Notes under the pieces: generated by a model
Told to the model about the DNA's origin: nothing
What the model saw: only the letters and a program-made list of their open reading frames with translations
The model's database searches: none
Made by a program: the position numbers and the translations under genes
Shown: piece after piece, positions 11,315 through 57,651 of the stretch
Layout: every line of letters starts with the position of its first letter
How positions within the stretch are numbered: position 1 is the stretch's first letter
Source of the DNA: Epiperipatus broadwayi
Lineage: Eukaryota > Animalia > Onychophora
Assembly: GCA_028023455.1 (NCBI GenBank)
Contig: JAQFVV010000006.1
Location: forward strand, 6,386,001 to 6,450,000
Length of the DNA: 64,000 nt
Direction of reading: 5' to 3'

Positions 11315-11357
11315 ACTTTTACTTTAAATGTTTTTTTTTTACTTTTAAAGTAAAAGT

Positions 11358-23420: not shown

Positions 23421-25758
23421 CCATATGGCTTTTTATATATTACAAGGTTGTGCGTGCTTATCATCATCTTAGTATTTAGATAAAGTCACTTATAACAATA
23501 TTTTATGTACTTTAATTTCGATATATTTTCATGTGAGAAGAATACGATACTGGAATATAGTATCTAACAGATTTAAATTTTAGTCATAAGATATTACTTT
23601 TCTTCATAAAATATATTTTGAATGTTTTTCATGGTTGGTCTTTGTGAAATTATCACAGAATCCTGGCCGCTTAAAAATATGTAGAATGAATGCACATATC
23701 ATTCATCAACATTACAATTAAGTTAAAACAATGGTTAGATTTTAAAATAATTAGCCAAAGATGGAGCTACAATCAATGGCAAAGGAGATATGAAGCATCT
23801 AAATCTGGTGATCTGAAGATCTAATGGCACCACTTGGCATAATTGAACAATAGGAAGAGCAAAAAAATCCAACGGGCAAGTGTATGCAAATAGAAACAAA
23901 AAGTTCCTACTACTCTGGGGTGACTGAAATACCACAAACCAGTCTTTTGATAATATTAAATTATCCTAAAATTGTGTAACTAAGGACTGACAATAGTTTC
24001 ATTTTTTAAAAATCATAAATTTACATTTTTTAAAATTTCTCTTGACACTGAACTAATAGTTTATTGGAAATGGTAATTTTAGTGAACGCTATCTAATTTA
24101 TTTCTCAGCAGTATATATATAAGCATGTCATTTTTATAGAGCAAAATGGTTGGATAAAATAATATTTATTTGAGTACTTATATATAATCACTTTGCCAAA
24201 AACTTGACAGACATATTTTGTTTAATTATCCATTTTCAGGGACGTCAACGTATTTTTTTTTCATCAAAATTATTTTATCGAACATGATACTTGTTAAGTT
24301 TAAAAAATATTAAGAAATCAAATATAAATTCATATTATGTTTAAAAAGAAATATTTTTTAATAAACGTCATTCATGACATTTAATTTGTTTATGTATATT
24401 ATAACGTACAAACCATTAACACAGTGTGAACATTATCGTAACTTTTTCATTTCCTGTAGTACTTTTATTCAAGCTGATGGTCAAATTATTTTTCCTAATT
24501 TTTTGCAAAAGTGATTAAAATTTGGAATCTCCAGTGACAGAAGCTATAGATTATTTTCACAATTATGGGATAATGCTAGTGCCCATACAAAAAGTGTGTT
24601 AATGTGAACAGAGACACAATGGTGATGTAATCTCAAAACATGGTAGAAGTGAATATTCTTTCATCATGTTTTTTTATTTTATTAGTTCTATTAAATTTTA
24701 CTTAATTACAATCATTTGAAGTTTTGTGTAATTTCTTGTCTTTTTATAATCATCTTTAAAAAATAAATTCAATTAAGTATTTAATACAATATTCATCTTT
24801 TTAAAAAAACAGCCATATTGTTAAAAAAAAATTATGCCCCTGAAAATGTACTATTAATAAAAATATGCCTGGCGAGCTTTCAGCAAAGGGATAATGGGAA
24901 TATATATAAGTACCTTTACTTGTTTCTTTACTATTTTTTTAATTTAAATTTATCTTCATTAAAAACAAATCCATTAAACAACTTTCTAGATATTCTCTTT
25001 CCATTTATGTTATTGAAAATAAAATCTCTTTTTTAATATAAAAGGCTTCCTTAATCATTCTAATTTCAATGAAAATGTTTAAATTTCTTTAAATAATCAA
25101 AAACATTGTAATTTTTATATTTTAAATTCTAGTTATTTTCTTCTTAGTGGCTCAAGCACAATTTACATTCCCATTGTTATCTCTACAATCTAAACATCAA
25201 ATTTTATAAATTGTCTTCATATTATCTAAACTGTTTATTGTTTCCCTCATTTAAAATATTTTAATTAATTTTCAACTTATTCATTAGATTAAAATTTATT
25301 ACTGGTTTATACTTTTAATTAATATACATTTTTAAAGAAACTTTTATAAATGTTTGTTTTATTCACTTTAAAACTCATTCTTTTGTTTATTTTTATTGAA
25401 GAATTTTAAATTCATTTATATTTTTATTTCTGAATAGGAATGTAAATGTTTATTTATTCCTTATTATAGTCATTGTATTCTGTTTCATTTTTTATATTAT
25501 TAAATTCGTGTTGTAGTATTATTTCATAATACATTATTATTATTTAGAGGGAGAAAGCATATTATGAATTTTTAGAAATATTGAAAATATATATAGCTTT
25601 GTATTTTGGAAAATGTTTAACAAATGTATTTTACCATTAAACATCACATGATCACCATCTCTTTCATTCTTGTAGTTTTGTAGTTGAGATAAAAGGTGGC
25701 TGCTGGATGGTTGCATTAGATCCTAAGATCTAGGTGGAGTGCTCTTAGATCCATGGCT

Positions 25759-25797
25759 CCTCACTGATGAAGACCATATCCAGAAACTAGTCTAGAA
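25759..25797 (+). ncRNA. Family A hammerhead (core intact, stems I and II decayed)
   Basis: CCTCA-CTGATGA-AGACCATATCCA-GAAA-CTAG-TC-TAGAA. Confidence 0.65.
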
Positions 25798-26208
25798 ATA
25801 TTGGATGGGTAGGCACTAGATAGGGATTTTATGCACAAGCCTTCTGGCATCCATTGATTACTCTGGTTAGCACAGGGTGGCACTACTGTATAGAGTTTTG
25901 CCTTGTTTAATAACAATTATGTGCTAGTATGAGATGGTGATCATGTGATGTTTAATGGTTTAACACCAATACTGCCTAGTAGAATAGTGGTGTCTATGGT
26001 TGTTAAAGAGCCAGACATCAAAATGTATGGGTGCTGAACTGAGTTCAGACCTATATGACTATATAAACTATTGAGCTTAGATTGAAAATATTATTGTGTT
26101 TTCAATTTCATTCGCATAAATTTTGTAGTTAAGTAGAGATAAAAGGTAGCTGATGGAGGGTTGCATTAGATCCTAAGATCTAGGTGCAGTGCTCTCAGAT
26201 CCAAGGCT

Positions 26209-26248
26209 CCTCACTGATGAAGGCCACAAGCCAAAAACTAGTCTGGGG
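26209..26248 (+). ncRNA. Family A hammerhead with G12A
   Basis: CCTCA-CTGATGA-A-GGC/CACAA/GCC-A-AAAA-CTAG-TC-TGGGG. Confidence 0.7.
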
Positions 26249-26504
26249 ATATTTGATGAATAGGCACTAAAGAGAAATTTTATGCACAAGCCTTCTGGCA
26301 TACATTGATTACTCTGGTTGGCATAGGGTGGCACCACTGTATGGAGAGTTTTGCCTTATTTTACCATTACTTACTTAAGAATCTGAAACATTTGACACTT
26401 AATAATAAAAAGCAATAGTACCAACTGTAGATTACTTAATAATTTTGATTAAAGAAGATATAGGGGAGAGAACAAACAGACATCATTGATATCTTTGAAA
26501 GTAT

Positions 26505-26735
26505 GGCTTTACTACTTGGAAGTTCATAAGAAGTTTGAGAGTCAAAATATCAGAATTAGAACTGATCCAAGAACATTACATTCAGAGACTAATTACCACT
26601 ACTTTAAATCCATAAAGGGATAAAAAAACGAATGGCTTATTGCTCAAACACAGTGCCAGAACAGGAATCAATCCAAGGACCTTATAATCCAAAAATTGAA
26701 TACTCTGCCCCAAACCACACAGGGCTTCGAAAAAA
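26505..26735 (-). mobile_element. Two tandem SINE family 1 copies
   Basis: Tails TTACTTGGAAGTTCATAAGAAGTTTGA and TTATTGCTCAA, followed by degenerate heads. Confidence 0.55.
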
Positions 26736-27835
26736 ATAGAAGACCTGAAATGTATTTGTTGCTAAAAGTGAGTTGAAATACAAAAACACTGAAACCTGGA
26801 TTCCAAGAGATTATAAATAATCTAAGGAAAAAACCACATATGAGATGGAAGGAAGAAATAAGAAGGTTTACTGGGATGATGAGTAAATGTTTTGGATCAG
26901 AAAACTTAAAATTCAAAAAAATCTTAATATTCTGAATATATAAACCACTAAGCTACATACAAAAGTAAGATTTCAAAACAGAACATTACATCAAAAAATG
27001 TGAGGAGAAAACAACATTTCTAAAACAAGCTTTATAACAAAAACTTATTAATGTATTATTAATTTGAAATATTATAAACCCCAAGCTCGAGTGCAGAAAG
27101 TCTTATTTATATAGAGAAAGGATTAATAAAGTCTGTCACAATAATTTGTTGGAACAATAACTCAAGAGTTCTTCATGATTATTGGACTATTTGAAAATAT
27201 TTGAACACATGCATCTAATTGCATAAATTGAGTAATTTAAATAATCAAGTCACATTTAAAATTAATTATAGTGATTGGAAACAAATACTAAATATAACCT
27301 TGTAGGAATAAAAATACTGCAGTAATATTATTACGTCATTTCTAAGAAACATTTAAATTAATAGGCTGGTTATAATAAGAAATCTACATGAATAAGTTAT
27401 ATGACTATGAAACCTACAGTAAATCAGAAAACTATAATTAAGTCCTTTTATTAAATATTCTATTAATGTATATATATATAATCAAATAACAATGTTAAAT
27501 TGTAATTAAGGACATTATAAATAATACAAATTTGGTAGCTTTCAGCAAATATTAATTTAGCCATTTTCAGTTACCTGTTAAAAACTGATACTGCTATAAT
27601 GTTTTGTTTCATAATTATACTAAATTGTAATTATGTATATTATTAGCACAAATAATCAAGAAATAATATTAAATTGTAATCATGGAGATTAATACATTGT
27701 ACAGGCTTAAATATGCATTTATATATGTAATATATGCGAGATTTGAACTCAGACTTTCACATGACCCACCACTCTCAGTGCCATCTCATATTGCTGACCC
27801 ACCTGATCACACACATGTTGAAAAGATAAATAATC

Positions 27836-27879
27836 ACCAATATAAGTATTTCATGCTAAACCAGCAATCATCAGTTGGT
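27836..27879 (-). ncRNA. Family B hammerhead (stem III palindrome broken)
   Basis: Minus strand ACCAA-CTGATGA-T-TGCT/GGTTT/AGCA-T-GAAA-TACTTA-TA-TTGGT. Confidence 0.8.
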
Positions 27880-28210
27880 CCAGATTACTATCTTCACACA
27901 TATATATAATCAGTGCTCAGATTTATATTAAGATCGCCAATCTTCATACTTTAATGGACAGGCTTCAAATTATTCAAACTGACAACTCTTCAGCCTTCCA
28001 TTTCATTGAAAATCTGATGGTGGAACGTTCAAAGCCCTTGTTAGTGCCAAGGTTGTCATCCTACCCATGTTGACATTAGTCATTCTGACCCCTCATGTAC
28101 AGGAGAATAATCCTTTTATACATACAGCCTGTCCATTAACGTATGAAGATTGGCTATCTTAATATAATGCTGAGCACTCATTATATATATGTGTGAGGAT
28201 AGTAATCTAG

Positions 28211-28254
28211 ACCAACTGATGATTGCTGGTTTAGCATGAAATACGGATATTGGT
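28211..28254 (+). ncRNA. Family B hammerhead (stem III palindrome broken)
   Basis: ACCAA-CTGATGA-T-TGCT/GGTTT/AGCA-T-GAAA-TACGGA-TA-TTGGT. Confidence 0.8.
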
Positions 28255-30221
28255 GATTATTTATCTTTTCAACGTGTGTGTGATCAGGTGGGTCAGCAAT
28301 ATGAGATGGCACTGAGAGGGGTGGGTCATGTGAAAGTCTGAGTTTGAATCCCACAATTATGGAGATTGTAAATTTAAAAAAGTGCTAGCTTTCAGCAAAC
28401 AATTTAGCCATTTTCAGTTGCTTTCTAAAAACTGATACTGCTATAATGTTTTGTTTCTTAATTATATGAAATATAGATATATATTAGCACAATAAATCAC
28501 ATTCAAGTATTACCAAAAACATTTGATTCTTTATAAAGCAAGTTTGGAACTGCCATGATATACATCAGGGCTAGAACACTATCATAATCGGAACATTTAT
28601 CAAAATGAAACAGCAGTAATTAGATTACATTGGAGGTCCATCAGGATGATTCCATATATGCAAAACTTTAAAACAGTTGTATGAAAAGCACTCTGCGAAT
28701 TAAAATGAGAAGTTAAGAAATAAAATACAGACAATTTAAATGATATAGATTTTTCTGAGAATACAATTTGTTTTTGCAAACAATGCTTCAGAACATCAGA
28801 CAATGTTGCAAAAATTACCATTCAAAAGTAATAAAGTGGTACTAGAAATAAATGTTAAAAAAGAAGAGGTAAAACATAAACATTAAATTCTTACTTTTTA
28901 AACATGTAAGCATATCTCCTTTTAATATTAAAACTCACATTCTCCAAGTTTAATTCTAATTTTACTTACGTTTTTATCTGTATTAATAATCTGACCAGGG
29001 TATATTAGTAATAGTTAGCTTCTAATTTGTGATTATAATATGGAATTCTGGTTAATTTTAAAGGTATCCCATTAATTTTAGTATGCCCCATTAAATACAA
29101 AGTGAAAAATTTTAAAAAAGATAAAATGAATAACATCCTTATTGATACATAAAAAAAACTTTTCTAACAATGAAATATATTTAATCATAAATGAGTTATT
29201 ATGAAGTTGTCACGAAATGACTTTATTTGTAAATAATAACAATAATGAAAACTAGGTTGAGCAAGTATATAAAAGTAAGTATATATGATTTGGCACTGCA
29301 GAAATAATACAGTTGAACACTGACAGTGTTAAAGCTGGACTGTGATCCATCGACCTTAAACTCCAGTCTACTCTTCTACCACTGAACCAAACCATGCGTG
29401 ACAAATCATTAAACTGGAGAAGCTCAAGAGAAATCTTAAATTAGTTACATGCAGGCAAAAAATGAGCAAAAGAGATCTAAAAAAAAATTACTGATAAAAG
29501 ACGTGTTGAAGTGAATACTGATATGTGCTTGCCATAACCGTGACATAGGGTTTGAACTGGGATGGATAAAACTTAGATAAAAAATAATTTAGATTTAAAA
29601 AATTTTCTGATTCACAACCCTTCAATTTGGGTTAGTAAATAAGATTATCTAATTATTTTTAACTAGAGGATAAGAAAAAAAACTTTGACCATCATTACCC
29701 AGCAAATAGATAGTGTCATTCTTCATTATTCTTTGGAGGGCTGTTGGAAAAAGTGGCTGTTTAAAGACTTGGTCACTTTTCTTTGATGTCCGATTTGTAA
29801 ATATATATCATACTTTTTCCATCATCTAGTTTAATTGTTAAATGTTTTTTTTTTTAAAAAGTCAAACTTTATTTAAACTTTTCAAATACATCAGTTAGTA
29901 GATAATACATTTTGAGTGAGATTTCTTCTTCAGATATTATGGCATGACTACTCATGATACTAAGGAAGAAGATCAAACAAGTGATCTTTAGATATATAAA
30001 TACTGAATTTAAACTACCAGTTATGTTTTTTTATTAAAACCTTCATTAGAACCTAATTTGTTAGTGTCAACTTAAATTTAGTAGCTATCAAGCAGTTGAA
30101 TTCCCATGTTATTGCTATCATTGGTCAGTCCACCAATGTCTGAAAAAAAGAGATTAACATTCAGAACATTGAGTTATAATAACATTTCACTCTTCTTACA
30201 CTTTAAAGCAAAACATATTCA

Positions 30222-31899: not shown

Positions 31900-34600
31900 G
31901 CATCCAAATGAACCGGGAAAAGAGGAGATTCATTCAATTAATTGCGTTTTTTAAAATTTACTCAGCTAAAAATAAATTTAAAACCTTTAGCTCTAACGTT
32001 CGTTAATTTATTATTGCGTTGACTACGCAAATCATAAAAGAAATTAATGCAATGCAAAAATATATAGAAGATAACTTACTTATAGCCTAAATTACTGTGC
32101 TATTACAATATCAACAATTAATATTTGAAGTTGGATTAAAAAGTTATTTATCACTCATCAAATAAAGATCACTATATCGCATGCATATACAAACATAACA
32201 CTAAATATTATCCACTGCCTGGTTTAGCGAAATAGTAGAGTGCGGATTCTGTAGTTCAAGGTCTCATGGATCGAGATTCTAGTTGTCATTTCCGGTTTCC
32301 GAACTTCTTATGAATTCCCGAGTAATAAGCTATTCGACTATTATTATATTAACACTGACGCATTCGAGCTAACTTACACGCACACGCTATTTTAACAAAA
32401 AAAAAAAAGTCACACTTTTGCTATAGCCTATGTATAAATAAACACGCGCACACATAACTATGAAAAACGGGGATATTTTTAAAAGTCCAAAAATTTTAAT
32501 GAATGTAAAGACCAATTACATATGCTTTAATAAGATGTAAATGTTCCTACTCCGCGAATTTTCATTAGCGTCTTTTTTTTTTTTTTGAACTCCAATAAGC
32601 TTTTGACTCACACTAGCAGTCATTTATCATATTCTATCTCCGCTTTAGAATTTAATGGGTATAAATTTACACTATTTCATACACTGTTTTTACATAATAT
32701 GTTTCGTTTTAGTTTTATAAGTTAATCCCGAGTACATTTTTCAAGTTCCCTTCCCCTTCCCAAGTTTAACAGAAAAAAAAAAAAAAGATGAGAAGCGTAG
32801 CGAGACTGGTTAATCAATGGGCAAGAACGGCTTTCACCGGTGCTAAGGTATCGTAATAGTTCACTCACTCAAGGAGGTTGTGATGCTTTACTTCTTTACC
32901 CCATCACATCCAAGTTGAGTGAGTAAACTACAGATACATTTCAGGATCAGCTCAAGTTATCCAGGATTTGGTTCAGCAAATGACATTGTAATCCGTGCTC
33001 GGGTAGAAGTTTGGCTCGGCCATTTTATCCAGAATCAAAATGCTATAAACCATTTTTAATCCCGGGATCGCAAACTTATTTTCCATATTTATTTGATTTC
33101 CCTCCCTCGTGTTCGATACAATCAAACCACTCAGAACTTTCTTAAAACTACTTTTCACTATTAGCCATTCTGCTAACTTCGCACTTTTTAAAAGAGTTCT
33201 ACTCACCAGCCCTAGCCAACACCCACAAATGCGCACTCCTATATACTAAAAAAGGTATCCACTATTCAAACGTATTTCTCTTCACTGCTCGAGACCATCT
33301 GTACAAGCATGGTCTAAAACAACAGTAATCTGATTGACAAACACTATTTCTCTAATAATTAATCACATGCTTACAGAAATCATGTGACTATTTAGCCTTT
33401 CCCTTTTCCGTTAGCTGCTACCGGAATAATTTAATCTTAGCCTTTTTTGTACAAATACGTTTTTTTTTTTTTCACTTTAGTTTACTTGTTGTTTTTTTTT
33501 TAAAGTAAAACCGAAACTTATAGATAAAAGTTTTTGATATTAGTTGATTCTTACAAATCAACGATAATAAATGCTTCAGAAAATGAGCCATTCAATTACG
33601 CACCCGAAACCCCCCTCCCCATGCCATCGCCTCAACCATTTGCCATAAAAACACACCCACCAAACAGTCATACTCCAATAACTACAGAAGGTTGGAAAAA
33701 AGTTGTCAGTTTAAACTAGCTTAAACTGAAAGACAAAGAAAAGCATTCATTTTAAATGCGAATATTAGAATATATTATTTACGTTTAAAAGTTATTTTCA
33801 TTATGGTTATTATCTGCGAACAAAATAACTTGACATATATACATATATGAATTTTATTGATGTAAGTTTAACAGTAGGCAGTATTTATATATATTTGTGC
33901 CCATCCTGTTTATACAGGATGGGCTATAAAAAAAAAAAACTTTATGTAAAAAAAATAGTGAATATATATAAAATAGACAAAAAACGCTTTCATAAAAGTA
34001 AAATAGTGAATGCCTACACAAAATTAGCAAAAGAAATTATAAAAGACTTTTACCTAAGCACAAGAATTTAAAAAAATTAAGTCACAGAATATTTACTAAT
34101 GTCATATTATATATATAACAATTTGTTAATTCAGAAAAACTAGGCTAATATGGGAATCTCAATGTGTGTGCGTGTGTGTTAATTGCTTTACATAATTTAG
34201 TATAGAGGTAGAATGTGAATATTCTAAAGTTAAATACCGACGCACGGATGATAACTCAAATTCGCTCTTTTTCCAGAGCTGGAATATCACAGGATCTCCA
34301 GGGAAACAAACTGTTTGTTTGCGTCTTTTACTTATTCACTATCAGTCGCTTGCAAAAGGGTAAGGCCAGTTCTAAATTTAGAAGAAAAAATAAAACATAT
34401 GTTCTTAGAAAAGACAAAATAAAAAGTTTAATGTGTGTTTTACCATGCCTATACAAACCCATCCTAATCTATCGCACGTTAATCCCCCCCCCCCCGACTT
34501 ATTATGAAGCATTCGTTTAATTTCTTCTGAGGTAAACTTTTATTTCTGAAATATTTCAATAGCTTTATTCAAATTTAGCTCTTCATTATATCCTATATCA
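31900..34600. promoter_or_regulatory. CpG-retaining region, candidate promoter or first-exon zone
   Basis: CpG dinucleotides are visibly frequent here and scarce in the flanks. Large repeats are nearly absent. TATA-like TAGTATATAGG on the minus strand near 33237-33247. Confidence 0.4.
32218..32345 (+). mobile_element. SINE family 1, CpG-rich copy
   Basis: GGTTTAGCGAAATAGTAGAG head, GGATCGAGATTC B-box-like, TTCCGGTTTCCGAACTTCTTATGAATTCCCGAGTAATAA tail. Confidence 0.7.
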
Positions 34601-37795: not shown

Positions 37796-39735
37796 TATTT
37801 ATATTTTCACCTGTATGATTATTTCTTTAAAAGAGTAATCGCAAACCTACATATTTGCATAAGACATTAAAATTATCACTAAGTGTTTATGACAAATCCA
37901 TTTACTTCTGTTTCTAATCACGACTCAATCCTTTTTTCTTTTCAAAAATATACAGAAAAGAAGTGATTTTAATTATAGAATTATAAGGCTAAGTGTTTAT
38001 GATACCTTTAGACACATATAAATGTAAAACAGATTTAGATAATGCATAGAAATGAAAAAAAAAATCCATCATTTCTGCCCAGGGAAGCAGTACAAGAAAA
38101 AATGCCACTTATTAGATTATTCACTCTCTTTAAAAATTTCTAGGGACTCATTTAACTGACCAATAATTGATAATTTAGCAAGGTGGGCTTTGTGATCGTT
38201 TTGTGGGGAAGAAATATTAAGTTTTCCAGGAAGTTTGCAGCTACTGAAAAAAAAAAACTTCCATATTCCATCTCTACTTAAATATAAATTATGGCAAATC
38301 AATGTTATAGCTTACACCATAATGTCATTAATATACTTGCACATGTCATCACTACGAACAGCCAATCAAAATTGATTGTAGCTGTTCTAACTTTAGAAGA
38401 ATAAAAAACCTAGAGAAAGAGGAAAAACTGGAAAAAATAACAAAAATAAAAATAATTAGAGTTGAAATGGCTATAGGGGTAATTAAATGATAGAAAAATG
38501 GATGCACATTCGCACAATCCCAATTAACACATTGGTTCAGGATTGGCTAATGGTATGAAGCTTATGATAATTGAATCTCAAGTAATTTAAATGATTACTA
38601 ATACAATAAAAGTAACCAAATGTTTATTTTTTTGGCAAGTCATGTGACATTTGAGCAATGAATGAGAATTGAATTTTGACTACAGAACTATCTTTTGAGC
38701 CTAACATTTTCCCTCTGCACTGCTCAGTAGCACCAATTTGAAAAGTTAGTTGCTTAAGAAGTCCTGTAACACTCAGCAATCCACAAATGAAGATTAAGCC
38801 TCAAAGTGGTGCCTTTAGCTTATGAGTATGTCCCTCTACCACTGTATTAAATGATGCAAAGTATCTATGTAACTGAAATCAGTTTTAGAATAGCAAATGG
38901 AGACAGAGACCAAGAGAAAAAAATTACGCTTAATTCAGTCAATAACATCAGTAACGCTCATTAGCATAACAAATTAAGAAAGTGATAATCCTCATTTATT
39001 CTAAGTTCTGTCATTATCCTCTTACTATACACACAATCCATTCGACAAAATAGAAAGTGACGCAAAGACGCAATCAATAGCGTTAGAAGTGTACATGTGT
39101 GTAAATATATATTCAATTTCTGAGATCCGCTGTGAACGGTTGGAAAAAAGTGTCTTTAATTAAACAAAATTAAAGGTCAAACATACAATTTCCTAACCTC
39201 CACATGTGTATAGGCTGTTTCATATTACAATCTTTCACTTATTATTACAGCTGATGTAATGCTATTTATGTGACTGACTCATATTAAAATAGTATTTTTA
39301 TTATGCAGCTAATAATAGCTAGATTTTCTTTCATGTAACAAAATAACAATGATCTATTATTGGAATTCAAATACAGGAAATGGCAGACCAGGTCCACCTT
39401 CTACCAGTACACCAAGTAACACTAAGTAGTGTCTTTATTAATTTTGAACTATTAATCTGATTTAAAATAATAAGACTGTTAAATTAAATAAATGTATTTT
39501 AATCTAAAAGTCAACCGTCTACAGAACTTTTAAGAACTGAACATTACAAAATCAAATATAGGAATGCATATTTCATAGTTTTAAGCAGAAGTGGTCCATT
39601 TATACTTTTAAAATGTTTATTGATGGCAGAAGGTATGTCACCTATTTAGCACATGCACAAACAGTAGTTTCTTTAGTATATAATTATGCTAAGAGCTTAC
39701 AAAAACAATTATAAAGTTTGATTAACTTAAATTAC

Positions 39736-39935
39736 TAAACATCACATTAGATCCTAAGATCTAGGTGCAATGCTCTCAGATCCAAGGTTCCTCACTAATG
39801 AAGTCCATGAGCTTAGAGTCTGTGGATATTGGATGAGTAGGCATTAAATAGGGACTTTATGCACAAACCTTCCTACATCCATTGATTACTCTGGCTTGCA
39901 CAGAGTGGCGCTACTGTGTGAAGGGATAGCCTCTA
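39736..39935 (+). mobile_element. Family A element with decayed HHR and 12-bp inverted cap
   Basis: TAAACATCACAT cap, then TAGATCCTAAGATCTAGG...CCTCACTAATGA..., ending near GCCTCTATGTG. Confidence 0.8.
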
Positions 39936-40426
39936 TGTGCTTGGTTAACTCTAGGCTGAATTTATATCTATAGAGATATCTTCATTACAAATTCCTTTTC
40001 CCAAATTTTTCTGGTCCTTTTATAAAATTTGTTGCAAATTCTAGGGTAGAAATTCTTATCAAGATTGAATTAAAAAATCGATCAATTCTCCGATTGAAGT
40101 AATTGGTGATATGGTATTCTTTCTTCATGATTGGCCTCCGAAGTACAACAGCTTTATATTGGGATAGAAAACTCTACCGGATTAGAAAACATTACTGATG
40201 CAAATGCTATTGTTTTAAAAACACCATTTGTTCCAAACATCTGTGGTTTGAAAATAATAATGTTTACATTTTAGCAAGCTTGATTTATCTTTATCAATAG
40301 ATTTTCATGTTATATATTTTTCTTTTTTAATAATCAATTAATATCAATCTGTTTTTGTCTGATATTAGTGTATATATATATTTGATTAGTGAGATTTAAC
40401 AAAACGTTGCTCAATAATAGATAGAT

Positions 40427-43475: not shown

Positions 43476-44221
43476 TCTGTTATGTGTGTACAAACGTAAA
43501 TGAAAGTAAGAAAAAATAAAAATAGTATTTATTAAAACATATATTATACATGCAAAATTAAATGTATGTAATTGTATGATGAAGGCATACTAATTAACTA
43601 TAAAGTACTATAGATTAATTAAATAGTATTAAATAAAAGTAAATCCTATACTTAAGATTGGCTATACGAAGAGATAAATCTAAGCTCAGTAAAGAAAGCC
43701 ACTGCAACTATGGAATGTTAGTTCTTGATCAGTTTTGATGATAGTGAAAAGTGATGACTAAAAAAATATACAATTAAAATGTAAATTATCTGATCTCAAG
43801 AATCAAATAAGTGAAGTAGTCATATGGACCACCATGTGGCCAATGATCAAAAGAGACAATGGACTACATCCAGGAAGCATAGGTAGAAGAACAGAGTATA
43901 GATAGACTCAAGGTGAAGTTCCAGGAACACAGACATGCCATCTGACTGGTACTGCAGTCACCTCTCCCTCACCTATGGCATCGTGAAGTTCACCTCTCCC
44001 TCACCTATAGCATCGTGAAGTTCACCTCCGAATGTATCGAAGTAAACTCAAGAATTCATAACAGGTCATATATATCTTCAGTATTATTTCTGTACGCCTT
44101 CTGGTCCATATAATTGTGTTCTATAGCGTATGAATATAAAGTGTGTAACTTAGAAAATTTATAAAATTACTAATAGTTTACAATATTCAAGTCTAACCCT
44201 CTGTTAATAAAACATTACTTT

Positions 44222-44420
44222 CAAACATCACATGATCACCATCTCTATACTAGCACACTCACTGATGATGGCCACAAACCAGAAACTAGTCTGAGGATAT
44301 TGGATGAGTAGGCACTAGATAGGGATTTTATGCACAAGCCTTCTGGCATCCATTGATTACTCTGTTTGGCACAGGATGGCACTACTGTATGGGGAGTTTT
44401 GCCTTTGTTTAAAACATTAA
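44222..44420 (+). mobile_element. Family A element with ~35-bp inverted cap and intact HHR
   Basis: CAAACATCACATGATCACCATCTCTATACTAGCAC cap is joined just upstream of the HHR; the element ends after GAGTTTTGCC. Confidence 0.85.
44258..44295 (+). ncRNA. Minimal type I hammerhead, family A, core intact
   Basis: CTCA-CTGATGA-TGG/CCACAAA/CCA-GAAA-CTAG-TC-TGAG. Confidence 0.8.
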
Positions 44421-44725
44421 CTACTAGCAGTGTCCATTCCATATTATTCAGAGAATTCCTTTTATTATTCGTTTATGCAATCCAGAGGTCAACAGTTTGC
44501 TTCTGGACACAGCAAAAGCCAGAAATGATAGAATTGAAACCGATCTGATAGTCTGTTATATTTTATCAATGAAAGATCTTTTTGTGCCATAGGTAAAACT
44601 ATGATCACAATAAATTTTTAGTATCAGTTCATTATTTTAATAGTGTTCCCTTAAAGTATGAAGATTGGCTATCTTATTATATATCTGAGCACTTATTGCG
44701 TATATGTGTAGAGATTATAATCTGG

Positions 44726-44769
44726 ACCAACTGATGATTGCTGGTTTAGCATGAAATACATATATTGGT
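44726..44769 (+). ncRNA. Family B hammerhead, core intact
   Basis: ACCAA-CTGATGA-T-TGCT/GGTTT/AGCA-T-GAAA-TACATA-TA-TTGGT, with distal stem I ATAATC/GATTAT. Confidence 0.85.
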
Positions 44770-45191
44770 GATTATTTATCTTTTCAACAAATATGTGTTC
44801 AGGTGTATCAGTGATATGAGATAGAGTGGTGAGCGGTGGGTCATGTGAAAGTCTGTGCTCATATACCCTATATATTAAATATATTGATATAGGTATATAA
44901 TAAGCCTGTATTTCAGTAATTACATAGTAGAGATGTCTGCCCACCCCTTGTATATGTATTAAATGGATTATGCCCTGTACATGAGGGATCAGATTGACTT
45001 TAGGTCAATAGGAATGTGACGAGAATCTCGGCCTCGACTTAGCCTTTGAGCATTCCATCATCAGATTTTCAATTGGATGGGTGGTTGAAGAGTTGGAGAG
45101 AATTGAAGCCTGTCCATTAAAGTATAAAGATTGGCTATCTTAATATATATCTGAGCACTTATTGCACATATGTGTAGAGATGATAATCTGG

Positions 45192-45235
45192 ACCAATTGA
45201 TGATTGCTGGTTTAGCATGAAATACGTATATTGGT
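45192..45235 (+). ncRNA. Family B hammerhead with C3U
   Basis: ACCAA-TTGATGA-T-TGCT/GGTTT/AGCA-T-GAAA-TACGTA-TA-TTGGT. Confidence 0.8.
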
Positions 45236-45438
45236 GATTGTTTATCTTTTCGACATATATGTGTTCAAGTGTATCAATGATATGAGATAGTTGTGAGCGG
45301 TCGGTCGTGTGAAAGTCTGTGCTCATATACCCTATATATTACATATATTGATACAGGTATATGATAAGCTTGTATTTCAGTTAATATTGTTCAATGTTAT
45401 ATGATTTTTTTATATTACTTTCTTGTAAATGAACACAT

Positions 45439-45542
45439 GTAAACATTGGTGGTCGAGAGGTCAGCGACAGCTGCTTTACAAGCAGTTGTCCCGGGTTAGC
45501 GGGTTCGCTTCCCGGCTGATGCTATGACACATGGGGAAAAAA
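45439..45542 (+). mobile_element. SINE family 2
   Basis: GGTGGTCGAGAGGTCAGCGACAGCTGCTTTACAAGCAGTTGTCCCGGGTTAGCGGGTTCGCTTCCCGGCTGATGCTATGACAC. Confidence 0.85.
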
Positions 45543-46060
45543 GTAAACATTTACAACTCATTCTACCTTTATATAGTTATTCTCAATTCAAGTCCTTAAA
45601 TACAAATTCTAATCTTATAAGCAATAGATAAAACTTCACAGCCTATTCCTTTTTTCACCCATCTTTCCAATTCAATAGTCTTTTTATTTTTTAAAAACAT
45701 TTAATTAAACCTACTTCAGATTACTAGCATAAGTTAAATTTTTCACATCAGTAAAACATTTAATTATTATCTTTTTTATCTTAATTGCAAAGCTTTGCTA
45801 TTATTTCTATTTATTAAAGGAAAAACCAGTTTTAAATAGAAATAATGGAAAAGATTTGGTAAATGGGCATTTATAGTCCAAATAAAAAGACTAACAAAAT
45901 GTAATTAAACGTTTCAGTTAAAAGGAAAAAATAAAATTATATCAGTAATTAAAGTAGACTATTTAAAAAGTTTTTTTTTTAAATAAAAAAAAAGAAACAC
46001 AAAAAGATATCAAAAAAAAGAATGTAATGGAATACAGTGAAATAGCAATGTGCAATGTAT

Positions 46061-47052
46061 CAAACATCACATGATCGCCACTCTTCATGCTTACCCAAGC
46101 TGTTTTTCACAAAGGCAAAACTCTCCATACAGTAGCGCCAATCAGTGCAAGCCAGAATAATCAATAGATGCAAGAAGGTTTGTGCATAAAATCCCTATCT
46201 AGTGCCTACTCATCCAATATCCCCAGACTAGTTTCTAGCTTGTGGTTTTCATCAGTGAGAAGTCTTGGATCTGAGAGTACTGCACCTAGATCTTAGGATC
46301 TAATGCAACCCTTTAGCAGCCATACTTTTTTTTAGCTAACTATAAAGCTTTGAGTCCAAAATGAAAACACAATTATGTTTTTAAGCTAAGCTCATTAGCT
46401 TCTATAGTTGTATAGATCTGAACTAAGCACAGGAACCATACTTTTTGGTGGGTTTGGTTCTTTAATAACCACAGTCCCTATAATCATATTGGGCAGGATT
46501 GGTATTAGACCATCAAACATGACATGATCACCATTATCCTCAGACTAGTTTCTAGCCTGTACCTTGCACTGAGTGACACTACTGTATGGAGAGTTTTGCC
46601 TCTGTGAAAAGCAGCTTGTGTAAGCATAAAGAATGGTGATCATATGATGGTTTAATACCAATCCTTCCCAATAAGGATTATGACTGTGGTTATTAAATAA
46701 ACAAAGACACCAAAAAGTATGAATGCTGAACTGAGTTCAGATCTATACAACTATACAAGCTAATAAGCTTAGCTTGAAAACCTTATTGTGTTTTCATTTT
46801 GGACTCAAAGCTTTATAGTTAGCTAAAAAAGTAAAAGATATCTCTGGAGGGTTGCATTAGATCCTAAGATCTAGTTGCAGTGCTCTCAGATCCAAGGATT
46901 TTCCCTGATGAAAGCTACAAGCTAAAAACTAGTCTGGGGATATTGGATGAGTAGGCACTAGATAGGGATTTTATGCATAAACTTTCCTGCATCCACTGAT
47001 TACTCTGGCTTGCACTGAATGGCACTATTGTATGGAGATTTTTGTCTCTGTG
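46061..47052. mobile_element. Family A ~1-kb fold-back (two near-monomer arms in opposite orientation)
   Basis: Minus arm 46061-~46530 has the terminus motif at 46061 and 46514 and an HHR at 46221-46259. Plus arm ~46560-47052 has an HHR with CTGATGA at 46905 and G12A. Confidence 0.88.
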
Positions 47053-48340
47053 TGCACTGTATAAATATACAAAATTCAATTATATGCTACACATAAGCAA
47101 AAAACTATAATTCATAAATAATATTATATGACATTTTCTGGCTTGAGCACCATACTCAATCACATTGAGTTACATTAAAAGCACATATAGCTTAACCTGC
47201 ACTTTTTTTTGTACTTACAGATAATCCCTGAATCCAAGATTGGCAGCAATGTTTTTTTTAATTATACATTTTCAGGGGCATAGTTATCCCACAACCCTAA
47301 TAAATATGTGTTACGTGTTAATATTAAAAAATGTCAATAAATTGATTATAAATCCCTATTAGCCTAAAAATAACAATAAATGTATTATAGAATTTATTCA
47401 TAAGATGTAATTAATTAATTTTTGTTAACATAGTATCACATAGAAGTGCTAACAGGTTCATAACATTGTCTTTTTACATTCAGAGTAAGATTGCCATAAT
47501 TTGACCTTCAGCGTGTTTGTTTTTTTTTGAGATCATATTCTCCAAAAGGTGGTGATGCATGCATAAACACGAGATTTGTGGTAATTTTGCAGGCCATTAG
47601 GAATTTCAGCCACTGACATGAATAACCCACATTAATCAATTTTGTTCTTAAAAAAATCCATGTAAAAATTATATTTACTGCAATTTGAATTATGAAATTT
47701 ATTTTTTATTTAAAATTTAATACTGTAATTTTGTGTTATTTTCATGAATGCAATTTATAATAAATATATTTATTGCTATTTTTTAACATTAACAGAAATT
47801 TGTAGTCAATTTATTGATGTTTTTTAATATTAACAAGTTAAATATATTCGTTAGAATTATGGAAAAATTATGCCCCTGAAAATGTATAATTAAAAAAAAC
47901 ATGGCTGCCAACCTTGGGTTCTAGGATTATCTATAAATATGCTTTTTTTCTTATCATTTTCAAATTTTAATGTAGTACAGTATTTCATGTAATAAAATGT
48001 TTTCTAAGCATATTACTAAAAATTAAATGATAAAATGAAAGTAATTGATTTAGTATAGGCAGAAAAAAAATGGTAAGATGTTTGTCTATCATTTCAGAAA
48101 ACTTACAAGTTTGTAGATTTATCTGAGAATCTAAAATAAGTAATGGAAAATAGTGGTGGATGTATGAATTCTGAAGTTAATACAAACTTAAAAATATCAA
48201 AACAATTACAAAGGTCATAGTTTTATGTTTCCATAGAGAAAGAGTTTCTCAAGGAAAAAAATATCCAGATTGTACATAATAACAAAAACAAAATTAACAC
48301 TTCACTATTCACTGTAATTAAAAAAAATAGAGTACAGTAA

Positions 48341-52303: not shown

Positions 52304-52384
52304 TAGGAAAAGATGGATTGAACTTGGAGAGACCTTCATCCTGCAGTAGATTGATAATGGTTGATGATGATGATGATGATGATG
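52304..52384 (+). mobile_element. 81-bp 3' tip of the RTE LINE with perfect TSD
   Basis: Matches 6710-6778 (GATGGATTGAAC..GAGACCTTCATCCTGCA..TTGATAATGGT(TGA)n). Flanked by ACTAGATGGGT at 52293-52303 and 52385-52395. Confidence 0.9.
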
Positions 52385-53901: not shown

Positions 53902-54493
53902 CATGAAGGTTTATGATGATGATATTTTAGAAGTGATAATATGTTGGACTATTTCCATCATCTATCATTAAATGTCTAGAAATTTTTCATCTTTATTTAA
54001 ACTTTTCAAATACAAACTTGTTAGTAATAACGTGCATGTAAACAACACAGGTTAGTAATTACACAATGTTATGAGTGGTGTTATTCTCTTTTCTTCAGGG
54101 GTTGCTGGCTTGATCAGTGACAATATTAGTGTAGGAGTTGAACTTACATCTTAGATTCTCAAATAATGAATTTTAAGGCAATGCTCTAACTAACTGAACT
54201 ATCCTGGCAAAGATTTTGAATAGCTCGGTTAGAGCATTGTTTTAAAATTTAATATTGGAGAATCTAAAAGTGTAAGTTCAACTCCTGTGCTAATATTGTC
54301 ACTAGTCAGGCCATCACACCTGTAGAAGAATGAAAAATAATACTACTCAAAACATTGTGTAATTACTAACCAGTATTGTCTATTTGTGTGTTATTACTAA
54401 TATGTTGTTTGCATTATAAAAGTTTAAATAAAGTTTACAATTTTCTAGACATTCAACATTTAGATGATGGCAATAGTCCAAGTTATTATCACA
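53902..54493. mobile_element. Family C fold-back (~260-bp arms, ~35-bp spacer), both HHRs decayed
   Basis: ~53932-54191 is mirrored by ~54226-54493. Degenerate HHRs near 54061-54100 (-) and 54316-54360 (+, CTGTAGA/AAAA). Confidence 0.8.
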
Positions 54494-54497
54494 TATA

Positions 54498-55540
54498 TAA
54501 TTAATTACAATTGTGCTTTACGCAAAAAAGTGAAGCTTGACTAAAATATTATATATGGCTTAGCGCTTTCAGAGACTTCAAGTCTCCATATTTTTAGCCT
54601 TATTTAATTAAAGTTTATTTATTCAAAATTTATGCAAAATTATAAAGCCCAATTTCTGGAGATTGCAAAGCACGACTCCTTGCAGTTTATTGCACAGTTG
54701 TCACATGCAATAAAGCCTGCTTCCTTAATTTTTTGCTTCACATCGTTATGTTCTGTGCACGGTGCTCTTGCCACAGTGGGCTCGAACCCATGGCCTGTCG
54801 CCTTTTGGTGCTCGAGGAATATAGATTTGTTTTCCGCATTATTTATAGCTCTCCGGTACAAATAATGATGTTGAGATGTTCTTGTTGTAATGTTGGCACG
54901 GGTCTCTCCATAATATGTTGCTCTACATCCATTGGTTGGGCATGAAATCCTAAAAACTGCTTGGGCTATTTGATCAGAAGGTATTTTGTCTTTGGTATTG
55001 TTTATCATTCTGTTTGTTGAAGGTGGGGTGTAGAATCCTAGTTCAAAGGACTCAGCAAATATTTTATAATATTTCCCAGCCACTGATGGTATGTAAGGTA
55101 GCAGTATTCTGGGTTTATTATTTTTCATCGTGTCAGTTTGCAACTTAGTTTGAAATTGCCTGATCTTTTTGTAGATAATGTTGTGTGAAAATCCAACATT
55201 TTCTAGCTCTTTAATATAATTTGTGAGGTTCTTTTTGCAGTCAGCTTCAAATTTACATAGTTTGTGATTTCTGTGCAGGAAGGAATTGAGTCCAGCTAAT
55301 TTATGTGAATTGGGCGAGTTCAAATTTGGATGTATAAATCCTCGAATTTCTACTGGCTTGACCATCATTGCATAGGTAAGTTGGTGTGGATCTCTATGAA
55401 CTCAAATAGCCAAATATTTAACATTGTGCTGGAGGTTTTCAGATGTGCAGTTAATTGTTAAGGAAGTTTGTGTTTGTAGCCATATATAATATTTTAGTCA
55501 AGCTTCACTTTTTTGCGTAAAGCGCAATTGTAATTAATTA
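54498..55540 (-). mobile_element. 5'-truncated Penelope-like element (EN+) with 63-bp inverted termini
   Basis: 54498-54560 is the reverse complement of 55478-55540 with one mismatch. It encloses a minus-strand ORF with a GIY-YIG endonuclease, and an HHR-like remnant lies at 54557-54599. Confidence 0.88.
54640..55368 (-). pseudogene. PLE RT thumb/linker plus GIY-YIG endonuclease, uninterrupted 242-aa C-terminal fragment
   Basis: HPN..SP.SHKL and ILLPYIP, then VFRISCPTNGC..TYYGET..TR..QH..EH..TGH: a GIY-YIG with the intervening CC and downstream HH typical of PLE endonucleases. Confidence 0.85.
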
Positions 55541-56035
55541 CTACTCAGAGGTGAAGTAGAAAATTAGTATTTTATCACATGTATAGTAGCTTTTCTCAAT
55601 CTTAGGGTCTGTCGAAATTTTTATGAGTCATAAAATGGTAGAAGACAGACAGAAAACAACAGAGTCGTTTATTCTGTTTTTATTTTCTAATAAAATTGAT
55701 TATTTTGTTAATTTGTTTTCCCAGCAAATAAAATAAATATAATACAAATTTTTTTTTAGTGAGTCTTATTTTTGACATGGTCAGTTTGGCCTTATTATTG
55801 TAATTATTTGATTTGAACAGATAGTAAAGATTCAAGCAGCACCCTTTTATTTGGGTCATGTGCCAATATAAACAAATTTTTTGGATCACAGTGTAAAAAG
55901 GTTGATGCCCTAAAGCAGTGACTTTGGGAGAGATTAATTTTTACCTTCTTAGTTCCTTCTCTCGTGGTTTTCTCTGTGATACTCTTACTATCATAATTTT
56001 ATATCAAATTCAAGAATTTCCCAATTAATTAGTCA

Positions 56036-56146
56036 TCAAGTGTTGTTATCCAAGAGGTCATCGCAGCTGCCTTGCAAGCAAGCACTTGTTTGCAGATGGT
56101 TGTGGGTTCGCCTCCTGTCCGATGCTATGACATATAGGGAAAAAAA
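56036..56146 (+). mobile_element. SINE family 2
   Basis: CAAGAGGTCATCGCAGCTGCCTTGCAAGC...GGGTTCGCCTCCTGTCCGATGCTATGACA plus A-tail. Confidence 0.75.
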
Positions 56147-56334
56147 TCATTAATTAGTGGACGAACTTTGCACACTAACTTATGATTGTCCTCCAGAGTA
56201 TAAAATCTTGTTTCTAGAATTCAAGTAATCAGGATGTTGTTTAAAAAAACATCAGAATCCAAAGGTTATTTAATAAACACTATTATTATTTAAAGAACAC
56301 TATTGTTCTCATATTCTGCTATTAAAAAGTAATC

Positions 56335-56450
56335 AAAGAGTTTGTTGCTCATGAGTTCATAAGAAGTTTGAACACTGAAAATGATATCTGGGCCACAATA
56401 ATGAACTTTAAGTTTCAGAATCTGTCACTCAAACACTGCACCAAATCACA
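56335..56450 (-). mobile_element. SINE family 1
   Basis: TTGTTGCTCATGAGTTCATAAGAAGTTTGA tail and CACTGCACCAAATC head end. Confidence 0.6.
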
Positions 56451-56659
56451 AAGGGCAACTTCCATTATACGGAAAATGCTATTGTTTTGATAAAATGCAT
56501 GGTATTAATGAGACAAACCAATATCTTTGTTTACATTTTTCATATATTCCCATCCTCTAACTTTATTTATAGGGTTATCCACCCTTATTAGATGTTTATT
56601 CGCACAATTAATTAATGAACACACATCACAATTGTTATATAATGAGTGTGAATAGCTCT

Positions 56660-56975
56660 TAACAAACTTTTCCAAATATCCCTATCCCCAGCCCAGTTTC
56701 TAGCTGTTGTTTGTCATCAGTGAGGTGCTAGGATATTCAGACAATAGATCTAAAAATACTAAATCAAGACCAGCATTTATCTAATAGTTAGCTATTAAGT
56801 AGAAAATCTGAAAATTTCAGACATATATGTCTTTAAATCCATCTAACTTAAATAGTCATATGGAGCTGAACTAAGTTCAGATACACCATGTATTAACAGC
56901 TTTAATAATATAACATCACTAAAACCTCAAAAGCAAAACTATAATTGCAAGGAAATTAAGCCATACATTAATCAA
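56660..56975 (-). mobile_element. Family A2-related element with canonical-core HHR remnant
   Basis: Homologous to the reverse complement of 10380-10700. Minus strand CCTCA-CTGATGA-..-GAAA-CTGG-GC-TGGGG at 56686-56725 (triplet lost). Confidence 0.65.
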
Positions 56976-57279
56976 ATTATAAATTAAGTAACGTGGTGTG
57001 TGATTTGATTTCTTTTCAACACATCACAATATTTATTTGTAGAAACTTGTAAATTCATTTTTATTATGTCAGTCATTATTTAGTTTATAACCTGTAAAAA
57101 ATAATCAATTACTACTATGACCCATTTAACTTTTTTGTCCCCATATTTCTTTGAGACTGAAATTATGGGTATTTGTAGATATATGAACGTGAAACGAAAG
57201 TAACTAACGCTCTCCCCACGAACTATGTTTAATCTTTTAATCGTGTATCAAAAAATGAACAATGGTATCACATATTAAA

Positions 57280-57651
57280 CCACTAAACATCACATGATCA
57301 CCATTCTTTATGCTTACACAAGCTATTTACACAGGAGTCTAAACTCTACTATAATGCCATTCTGTGCAAGCCAGAGTAATCAATGGATACAAGAAGGTTT
57401 TTGCATAAAATCTCTATGTAGGGCTTACTCCTCCAATATCCCCAAACTAGTTTCAAGGTTGTGGATGTCATCAGTGAGAAGCTTGGATCTGAGATCTAAA
57501 CCTCACTGATGAAAGCCACAAGCTAGAAACTAGTCTGGGGATATTGGATAAGTAGGCACTAGATAGAGATTTTATGCAAAAAACCTTGCATTTATGGTTT
57601 ACTCTGGCTTGCACAGAATGGTGCTACTGTATGGAAAGTTTAGCCTCTGTG
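57280..57651. mobile_element. Family A fold-back with back-to-back HHRs
   Basis: Minus arm 57280-57493 (HHR 57440-57478) and plus arm 57501-57651. Confidence 0.88.
57501..57540 (+). ncRNA. Minimal type I hammerhead, family A, intact
   Basis: CCTCA-CTGATGA-A-AGC/CACAA/GCT-A-GAAA-CTAG-TC-TGGGG. Confidence 0.88.

What the first reader, a model, noticed from the sequence alone, without database searches (positions are those of the whole stretch)
25634..57651. Independent family A insertions share two fixed, unequal ends (PLE-type inverted cap plus tail)
Seen: one boundary is repeatedly AAACATCACAT(GATCACC), at 25640, 39737, 44223, 46062, 57285 and reversed at ~2985-3002. The opposite boundary falls near GAGTTTTGCC(TCTGTG), about 50 nt earlier in the monomer (about 26355, 39930, 44405, 47050, 57650, 2758, 60112). 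The inverted piece varies from 12 bp to nearly a monomer. Family C shows similar asymmetry (~25 nt), as does the family B fold-back (~50 nt). Established: PLE insertions often show an inverted 5' repeat with a short extra tail. Inference: a shared priming and strand-switch mechanism ties these non-coding families to PLE machinery and not to RTE or DNA transposases.
Basis: partly seen in the sequence, partly recalled or inferred. Interest (0 to 1): 0.8.

Follow-up and report, generated by a model that had tools for sequence, protein, structure and literature searches.

The report
Hammerhead repeats inserted with Penelope-type ends
A very abundant 452-base non-coding repeat carrying a small self-cleaving RNA motif has inserted many times with the same two unequal ends, the footprint that Penelope-like retrotransposons leave, so it is a clear example of a known kind of parasitic DNA borrowing that machinery.

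Summary
Family A is a 452-bp head-to-tail repeat carrying a minimal type I hammerhead motif.

- **Structure:** six of the seven copies in the window are single insertions flanked by target-site duplications (TSDs). Each has two arms lying head-to-head.
- **Two fixed ends:** the direct arm ends at monomer positions 11-18 (GAGTTTTGCC+). The inverted arm starts at 60-70 (AAACATCAC..., sometimes 7-10 nt further out). The one-sided "tail" is therefore 44-58 nt.
- **Variable part:** the inner junction differs in every copy, and the inverted arm runs from about 11-20 nt to about 500 nt.
- **Other families:** B and C show the same one-tail asymmetry (about 45 and 28 nt).
- **A real PLE nearby:** a true Penelope-like element (PLE) fragment in the window (GIY-YIG end of an RT-EN ORF) carries a 63-nt inverted cap.
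- **Genome-wide check:** contigs from four DNA runs of one sample make the short site the dominant terminus. The long site could not be checked.

This matches the published PLE footprint of inverted pseudo-LTR, optional one-sided tail, 8-10 bp TSD and two internal reverse-transcription start sites. Mobilisation of animal hammerhead repeats by PLEs is already a published hypothesis.

The scan noted this footprint before elsewhere in this genome (s1-184210, s1-177591). My verdict is a new member of a known kind. No helper element was identified.

The parts
25640..26356 (+). Family A copy c2. A 22-29 nt inverted cap (monomer 60-67 down to 38) is followed by 1.56 direct monomers ending at monomer 11-12. 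TSD TATTTTACCATTA lies at 25627-25639 and 26357-26369.
2753..3009 (-). Family A copy c1. The inverted arm runs from monomer about 67 down through 1 to about 432. The direct arm runs 292 to about 16. TSD ATTACTTTCTTA lies at 3010-3021 and 2741-2752.
39728..39941 (+). Family A copy c3, the oldest. It has an 11-20 nt cap (AAACATCACAT at 39737), then a direct arm from 271 to about 16. The TSD is weak: TG[A/G]TTAACT.
44218..44409 (+). Family A copy c4. Five unmatched nt come first, then a cap from monomer 60 down to 27, then a direct arm from 317 to about 15-18. The cap sequence is absent from the direct arm. TSD TAAAACATTA lies at 44208 and 44410.
46061..47052 (+). Family A copy c5, a fold-back with two arms of about 500 nt each. 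The left arm ends at monomer 61 and the right arm at monomer 16. The left arm also has an internal jump (monomer 358 to 40). The 10-bp TSD has one mismatch and lies at 46051-46060 and 47053-47062.
57277..57653 (+). Family A copy c6, a fold-back. The left arm runs from monomer 68-70 down to about 300. The right arm runs 316 to 16. TSD ATCACATATT lies at 57267 and 57654.
60105..60224 (-). Family A copy c7. It is a single 5'-truncated direct arm ending at monomer about 16, with no cap.
26214..26243 (+). Minimal type I hammerhead motif of family A (CTGATGA, 3-bp helix II, GAAAC-TA-GTC). The predicted cut follows monomer 350. The same motif is found in all arms long enough to hold it.
   Evidence: no Rfam match
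27691..28358 (-). Family B fold-back (466-bp monomer). One arm ends at B about 268-272 and the other at B about 222-228. TSD ATGGAGATT lies at 27682 and 28359.
44649..45380 (+). Family B direct 1.6-mer ending at B 269. The TSD is TTAATA[G/T]TGTTC.
58637..59131 (.). Family C fold-back. The left arm is 28 nt longer than the right. TSD TAACAATATTGT lies at 58625 and 59132.
53904..54497 (.). Second family C fold-back. The left end is at the long site and the right end at the short site. The right end abuts the PLE fragment, and no TSD was found.
54498..55540 (-). 5'-truncated Penelope-like element. ORF 54640-55368 is the linker plus GIY-YIG end of an RT-EN protein. A 140-nt 3' region follows. A 63-nt inverted cap (55478-55540) mirrors the 3' end, and both ends stop at the same base.

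Best explanation
Family A, and likewise families B and C, is a non-autonomous, non-coding hammerhead repeat. It can be called a retrozyme-like or pseudo-LTR-only element. It is copied into the genome by the reverse transcriptase-endonuclease of a Penelope-like element.

Proposed steps:
1. A multimeric or circular sense RNA is bound by the enzyme.
2. The endonuclease makes a staggered double cut, which later appears as a 9-13 bp TSD.
3. Each of the two DNA 3' ends primes reverse transcription inside the RNA, not at its end.
4. The two start windows lie about 50 nt apart. In family A they are monomer 11-18 and 60-70, which is about 115 and 165 nt downstream of the predicted ribozyme cut.
5. The two cDNAs run towards each other's 5' side. 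They are joined at a place that differs in every insertion, by template jump or end joining.

The result is two head-to-head arms with fixed outer ends, one arm being longer by the tail.

**Shown:** the anatomy, the TSDs, the fixed ends, the motif, and the presence of a PLE with the same kind of cap.

**Inferred:** the enzyme, the RNA form, and the order of events.
For: **Fixed ends in the window.** Six of six two-armed family A insertions have one end at each site and a variable junction.

**Template longer than one unit.** Arms exceed one monomer in c2 and c5. The read laying also shows "goes back 450" joints. Both require a multimeric or circular template.

**No hairpin or TIR origin.** In c3 and c4 the cap comes from monomer positions that the direct arm never reaches.

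**One tail per insertion.** Counting families B and C, nine of nine two-armed insertions have exactly one long and one short end. If each arm chose its site independently, the probability would be at most 0.5^9, about 0.002.

**Hammerhead motif.**
- The core CUGAUGA...GAAAC is conserved.
- 83% of cells are paired, against at most 41% when the partners are slid.
- One helix II pair is A-U in five rows and G-C in the other five.

**PLE in the window.** The ORF has 591 homologues. The full-length ones (760-870 aa) are RVT_1 plus a C-terminal GIY-YIG domain. The fragment has a 63-nt inverted cap.

**Genome-wide.** The short site is the dominant true loose end among more than 100,000 contigs per run.

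**Literature.**
- A 31-bp tail on one of the inverted pseudo-LTRs, TSDs of 8-10 bp, and pseudo-LTRs sufficient in trans (PMC3846280).
- A 30-40 bp tail at one end (PMC8557442).
- Two adjacent internal RT start sites that define the tail, about 85-92 nt past the hammerhead cut, with both strands cleaved and extended (PMC11167929).
Against: - No helper is identified. The one PLE fragment in the window shares no sequence with families A-C. Its 140-nt 3' region holds no CTGANGA...GAAA core of the kind scanned for. Its two ends are equal, with no tail.
- The tail here (44-58 nt) is longer than the published 30-40 nt.
- Rfam hammerhead models do not match, and self-cleavage is untested.
- The long site was not confirmed genome-wide.
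- In vitro, Frangieh et al. saw no difference in start site between the two strands. That does not by itself predict exactly one tail per insertion.
- In family B the direct arms use the distal site, whereas in family A they use the proximal one.
Confidence: 0.75

Rival explanations
1. The machinery is the same (PLE), but there is only one reverse-transcription start site. The tail is produced afterwards, when the endonuclease resolves the integration intermediate.
For: Craig et al. [quoted passage not shown] This would naturally give exactly one tail per insertion, as seen in nine of nine cases.
Against: Frangieh et al. 2024 mapped two RT start sites that coincide with the ends of the tail. 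Single-arm copies of family B end at the distal site, while those of families A and C end at the proximal site. Both sites can therefore serve as a simple 3' end.
Confidence: 0.12
2. The repeats are mobilised by a LINE (RTE or L1-like) enzyme, and the inverted cap arises by twin priming.
For: LINE remains exist in the window: a zf-RVT ORF at 41007-41528. Twin priming is known to give an inverted 5' piece plus a TSD (own knowledge: Ostertag and Kazazian 2001).
Against: - There is no poly(A) or simple-repeat 3' end on any copy.
- In twin priming the outer end of the inverted piece is variable. Here it is fixed, and it lies beyond the 3' end of the direct arm.
- The motif and architecture are those of PLEs.
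Confidence: 0.05
3. The structures arose at the DNA level. They could be a fold-back or MITE-type transposon, a hairpin self-priming product, or two independent insertions in opposite orientation at a hot spot.
For: c5, c6 and the family C copies look like long palindromes. Arkhipova 2013 considered self-priming for palindromic junctions.
Against: - TSDs flank the whole two-armed unit.
- c1-c4 have non-palindromic junctions.
- In c3 and c4 the cap has no partner in the copy.
- The arms are unequal by a constant tail, which a snap-back cannot produce.
- TSD length varies from 9 to 13.
Confidence: 0.04

Closest known systems
Penelope-like element insertions (pseudo-LTR, inverted 5' copy, one-sided tail). 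Sources: Arkhipova et al. 2013 PMC3846280, Craig et al. 2021 PMC8557442, Frangieh et al. 2024 PMC11167929.
   Same: Shared features are head-to-head inverted arm, partial tandems, a tail on one end only, short variable TSDs, a minimal type I hammerhead upstream of the ends, and ends that lie inside the repeating unit about 100 nt past the ribozyme cut.
   Different: Family A has no ORF at all. The tail is 44-58 nt rather than 30-40. The whole unit is only 452 bp and is extremely abundant. No sequence is shared with the one PLE fragment available here.
Animal non-LTR retrozymes. Sources: Cervera and de la Pena 2020 PMC7229834, Li, Clavereau and Pollet 2026 preprint 10.64898/2026.07.22.740005.
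   Same: Both are non-coding head-to-tail repeats of 150-450 bp with a type I hammerhead, low G+C and TSDs longer than 4 bp. Both coexist with PLEs, which are the proposed helpers.
   Different: The hammerhead here is the minimal PLE-type (2-bp helix III with a 2-nt loop), not the canonical form with loop-loop contacts. Circular RNA was not tested. Those papers argue from the shared ribozyme, co-occurrence and pseudo-LTR similarity. A word search of both found no mention of a tail or of inverted arms.
L1 twin priming (own knowledge)
   Same: Both DNA ends prime reverse transcription, giving an inverted 5' piece joined to a direct 3' piece inside one TSD.
   Different: In L1 the second priming site is arbitrary and the 3' end is poly(A). 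Here both start windows are fixed and internal.

Membership tests
PLE-type insertion footprint | Inverted 5'-truncated copy adjacent to the direct copy, head-to-head | tested here: met
   Six of seven family A copies; also the B and C fold-backs
PLE-type insertion footprint | Short extension (tail) present at one end only | tested here: met
   Nine of nine two-armed insertions have exactly one tail: A 44-58 nt, B about 45, C 28
PLE-type insertion footprint | Partial head-to-tail tandems (pseudo-LTR-like) | tested here: met
   c2 is a 1.56-mer and the c5 arms exceed one monomer. "Goes back 450" joints appear in the genomic contigs.
PLE-type insertion footprint | Short TSD of variable length | tested here: met
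   9-13 bp, exact copies located
PLE-type insertion footprint | Minimal type I hammerhead in the repeated part | tested here: inconclusive
   The core and three helices are present, with one compensatory pair. No Rfam model matches and cleavage is untested.
Autonomous Penelope-like element | ORF with reverse transcriptase and GIY-YIG endonuclease | tested here: not met
   Family A has no ORF. Only the separate fragment at 54498-55540 encodes the GIY-YIG end. Family A is therefore at most a dependent of PLEs, not a PLE.
Non-autonomous derivative of a named PLE | Sequence shared with the pseudo-LTR or 3' end of an autonomous partner in the same genome | tested here: inconclusive
   No similarity to the one 5'-truncated PLE in the window. 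Other PLEs of the genome could not be reached.
Animal non-LTR retrozyme | Non-coding tandem repeat of 150-450 bp with a type I hammerhead, low G+C and TSDs over 4 bp | tested here: met
   452-bp unit, about 30% G+C
Animal non-LTR retrozyme | Expressed as circular RNA of monomer length | not testable with these tools
   Runs guessed to be RNA, from several organism labels, hold 20-31% of the copy's words. The single read-laying run was already spent.
LINE-mobilised SINE / twin priming | Poly(A) or simple-repeat 3' end; variable inverted-piece end | tested here: not met
   The ends are GAGTTTTGCC+ and AAACATCAC-type in all copies
Fold-back / MITE DNA transposon | Terminal inverted repeats at both ends of every copy | tested here: not met
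   The c3 and c4 caps (monomer 27-60) have no partner in the copy

The most novel reading that the evidence does not exclude
The two ends are coupled, not chosen independently. Every two-armed insertion uses one proximal and one distal start site (nine of nine across three unrelated families). In families A and B the sites sit at nearly the same distances from the ribozyme cut, about +110 and about +160.

This would mean that a dimeric PLE enzyme holds the two DNA 3' ends about 50 nt apart on a single RNA, like a ruler. These tiny repeats would then be natural minimal templates that define the rules of PLE integration.
Probability: 0.25. Interest if true: 0.6.

Novelty: new member of a known kind. 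Interest (0 to 1): 0.4.

Why it matters
That PLEs move animal hammerhead repeats is so far argued from a shared ribozyme type, co-occurrence and pseudo-LTR similarity. The integration footprint is a more direct, mechanism-level line of evidence. A word search of the two retrozyme papers consulted found no mention of it.

The genome holds a very large number of family A pieces (over 100,000 contigs per run lie on one monomer), and they are short enough to read end to end. It could therefore serve as a natural data set for the still poorly understood PLE integration steps: where reverse transcription starts, whether the two ends are coupled, and how the arms are joined.

For annotation, the finding explains many "fold-back" and "satellite-like" repeats in this genome as single retrotransposition events.

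Tried and rejected
- **Rfam.** The gathering scan of the whole window and permissive scans of two copies gave no hammerhead match. The motif was therefore checked by hand and by pair counts.
- **Word-indexed protein search.** The PLE ORF found nothing (length-window limit). The exhaustive search did find homologues. Exact-protein look-up of the PLE ORF found no other contig.
- **Metagenome scan.** AAACATCACATGATCACC gave 56 loci, but none has any family A similarity. They are chance matches.
- **Read laying.** It confirmed the short site only. Four other strong loose ends (25782, 25798, 25862, 26013) read on as family consensus. These are alignment breaks caused by divergence of the reference copy, not termini. 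The depth profile is dominated by collapsed high-copy words and was not used.
- **Other hammerhead repeats in the window.** The repeats at 11198-11455, 19309, 30260, 36267 and 56720 were looked at. They gave too few copies to define ends.
- **RNA folding of the tail region.** It gave no consistent structure beyond a small GCUU-NNNN-AAGC hairpin in one subfamily.
- **Microhomology between target and template.** It is clear only in c2 (7 nt) and possibly at the c4 3' end. It is not a general rule.
- **ATT near the TSD end.** Four of nine TSDs have ATT within their last four bases, against a background of 0.087. This echoes the ATT cleavage preference reported for PAc, but it is a post-hoc count with uncertain boundaries.
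Full report
**What is there**

The window is AT-rich (about 30% G+C) and comes from a protostome-type animal genome, judging by a strong mir-67 hairpin.

Family A is a 452-bp unit. In copy c2 two stretches repeat at a spacing of 450-453 bp. I used window 25894-26345 as the coordinate system, with position 1 at the A of AGTTTTGCC. BLAST of this unit against the window finds seven copies. Reading their ends and flanks gives the following.

| Copy | Coordinates | Arms (monomer positions) |
|---|---|---|
| c1 | 2753-3009 (-) | inverted ~67 to ~432; direct 292 to ~16 |
| c2 | 25640-26356 | cap 60-67 to 38; direct 1.56 monomers to 11-12 |
| c3 | 39728-39941 | cap 11-20 nt; direct 271 to ~16 |
| c4 | 44218-44409 | cap 60 to 27; direct 317 to ~15-18 |
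| c5 | 46061-47052 | two arms of ~500 nt, ending at 61 and 16 |
| c6 | 57277-57653 | left 68-70 to ~300; right 316 to 16 |
| c7 | 60105-60224 (-) | single direct arm ending at ~16 |

Exact or near-exact direct repeats of 9-13 bp flank the whole unit in c1, c2, c4, c5 and c6 (positions). Each is therefore one insertion event.

**The observation**

- In all six two-armed copies the left part is an inverted piece of the monomer. Its outer end falls at monomer 60-70.
- The right part is a direct piece whose 3' end falls at monomer 11-18.
- The junction between them differs in every copy, and the inverted piece runs from about 11-20 nt (c3) to about 500 nt (c5).
- Ends clustered within windows of about 10 nt on a 452-nt circle cannot be chance.

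- In c1, c3 and c6 the inverted arm runs 7-10 nt beyond AAACATCAC.
- c4 has five unmatched nt at that end.
- In c2 seven nt are shared with the TSD.

The distal end is therefore a window of about 10 nt, not a single base. The tail is 44-58 nt.

Both arms have their sense 3' ends outward (head-to-head). In c3 and c4 the cap comes from monomer positions 27-60, which the direct arm of the same copy never reaches. The cap therefore cannot come from a hairpin or from terminal inverted repeats. It must have been copied from a template longer than the insertion.

**The ribozyme**

Every arm long enough carries CTGATGA, a 3-bp stem and GAAAC-TA-GTC, flanked by a 6-bp helix I. I aligned eight family A arms and two arms of a related family. 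On that alignment:
- The proposed helices pair in 83% of cells, against at most 41% when the partners are slid.
- One helix II pair is A-U in five rows and G-C in the other five.

Helix III has only two pairs and a two-base loop. This is the minimal form that the literature associates with PLEs (PMC7229834). Rfam models do not match it, and cleavage is untested.

The predicted cut follows monomer 350. The two end windows therefore lie about 114-121 and 162-172 nt downstream of it.

**Other families**

| Family | Unit | Evidence of two sites | Distance past predicted cut |
|---|---|---|---|
| B | 466 bp | Three direct 3' ends at B 262-274. A TSD-flanked fold-back (27691-28358) has its other arm ending at B ~222-228. 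| about +109 and +155 |
| C | fold-backs | 58637-59131 (12-bp TSD) and 53904-54497 each have one arm 28 nt longer than the other. | about +141 and +172 |

Taking the three families together, nine of nine two-armed insertions have exactly one long and one short end. Independent choice of site for each arm would give this with probability at most 0.002.

**A real PLE in the window**

- 54498-55540 (-) holds a 242-codon ORF with a GIY-YIG-like motif.
- An exhaustive search gives 591 homologues. The full-length ones, 760-870 aa, have RVT_1 followed by GIY-YIG, and the match lies at their C-terminal end.
- The copy is 5'-truncated and carries a 63-nt inverted cap of its own 3' end. This is the same kind of cap as in c2 and c4, although here the two ends are equal.
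- It shares no sequence with families A-C. It shows that PLEs were active here but is not shown to be the helper.

**Genome-wide check**

I laid the contigs of four DNA runs of one sample on a permuted monomer (25690-26140) at 80% likeness.
- 108,000-139,000 contigs per run lay on it. The family is therefore extremely abundant.
- Joints that "go back 450" show head-to-tail arrays.
- Among the best-supported loose ends, only those at 25891/25895 (460-650 contigs each per run) read on into non-family sequence. Their consensus is GGAGAGTTTTGCCTT followed by low-agreement AT-rich letters. This is the short site.
- The other strong loose ends read on as family consensus and are alignment breaks.
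- The long site is not in the 24 rows shown (2651 hidden). It is untested, not contradicted.

**Comparison with what is known**

- Arkhipova et al. 2013 describe the typical Penelope insertion as an ORF between two pseudo-LTRs plus an adjacent inverted pseudo-LTR. [quoted passage not shown] They also report pseudo-LTRs sufficient for mobilisation in trans.
- Craig et al. 2021 give a 30-40 bp tail, often at only one end.
- Frangieh et al. 2024 show in vitro that a PLE protein cleaves and extends both DNA strands. Reverse transcription starts at two adjacent internal sites, 111-118 nt into the ORF, while the hammerhead cut is 26 nt into it. The tail is the stretch between the two sites.

Family A fits this picture point by point, with a somewhat longer tail and a similar distance from the ribozyme.

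That animal hammerhead repeats are moved by PLEs is a published hypothesis (PMC7229834; preprint 10.64898/2026.07.22.740005). It is argued from ribozyme type, tandem structure, co-occurrence and pseudo-LTR similarity. A word search of both texts found no use of the tail or inverted-arm footprint.

Within this scan the same footprint was already noted elsewhere in this genome. One such case was followed up and judged a known kind.

**Verdict**

The finding is a clean, many-copy example of a known mechanism acting on non-coding hammerhead repeats.

The part that goes beyond the literature I read is twofold: exactly one tail per insertion in three families, and similar spacing from the ribozyme cut in families A and B. 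Both rest on nine insertions in one window and need the genome-wide count.

Noticed in passing
window 32853-32934 (-): There is a strong mir-67 microRNA precursor match (68.9 bits, E 9e-14). It points to a protostome host.
   Followed up: no
window 45442-45524 (+): A tRNA-like sequence (ARAGORN Val-TAC; Rfam tRNA 34 bits, with a long variable region) lies 60 nt after the 3' end of the family B 1.6-mer. It may be a tRNA-derived repeat rather than a gene.
   Followed up: partly
window 54497/54498: The 3' end of the PLE fragment abuts the 3' (short-site) end of a family C fold-back exactly, tail to tail, and no TSD was found for either. This may reflect PLE endonuclease targeting of existing element ends.
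   Followed up: partly
window 27700-27760, 28320-28350 and 58900-58925: One family B subfamily and family C contain GAGTTCAAATCTCGC- and GCGAGTTCAAC-like stretches. These resemble a tRNA T-arm or polymerase III B box after CpG decay.
   Followed up: no
window 11198-11455: Another head-to-head fold-back carries two hammerhead-like cores (CTGAAGA...GTCGAAAC) about 50 nt apart. The ends and TSD are not resolved.
   Followed up: partly
window 19309 (+) and 56720 (-): Two copies of a further hammerhead family have helix I and core very like family A (CCTCACTGATGA...GAAAC...CTGGGG) but are otherwise unrelated.
   Followed up: partly
family B and C distal ends (45374-45380; 58637-58643 on the minus strand): The long-site 3' ends of families B and C both read TTTCAG. 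This could mean they share a helper.
   Followed up: no
window 41007-41528 (-): An ORF has a weak zf-RVT match (E 1.3e-05, just under the Pfam cut-off). It is probably a LINE remnant.
   Followed up: no
window 25662-26345 (run search): Small runs guessed to be RNA, from about ten different organism labels, hold 20-31% of the sampled words of this family A copy. This suggests the family is shared by related species and perhaps transcribed.
   Followed up: no
window 46533-46561: The left arm of c5 has an internal jump from monomer 358 to 40. This leaves a 22-29 nt ribozyme-region patch next to the junction, so at least one extra template jump or deletion occurred.
   Followed up: partly
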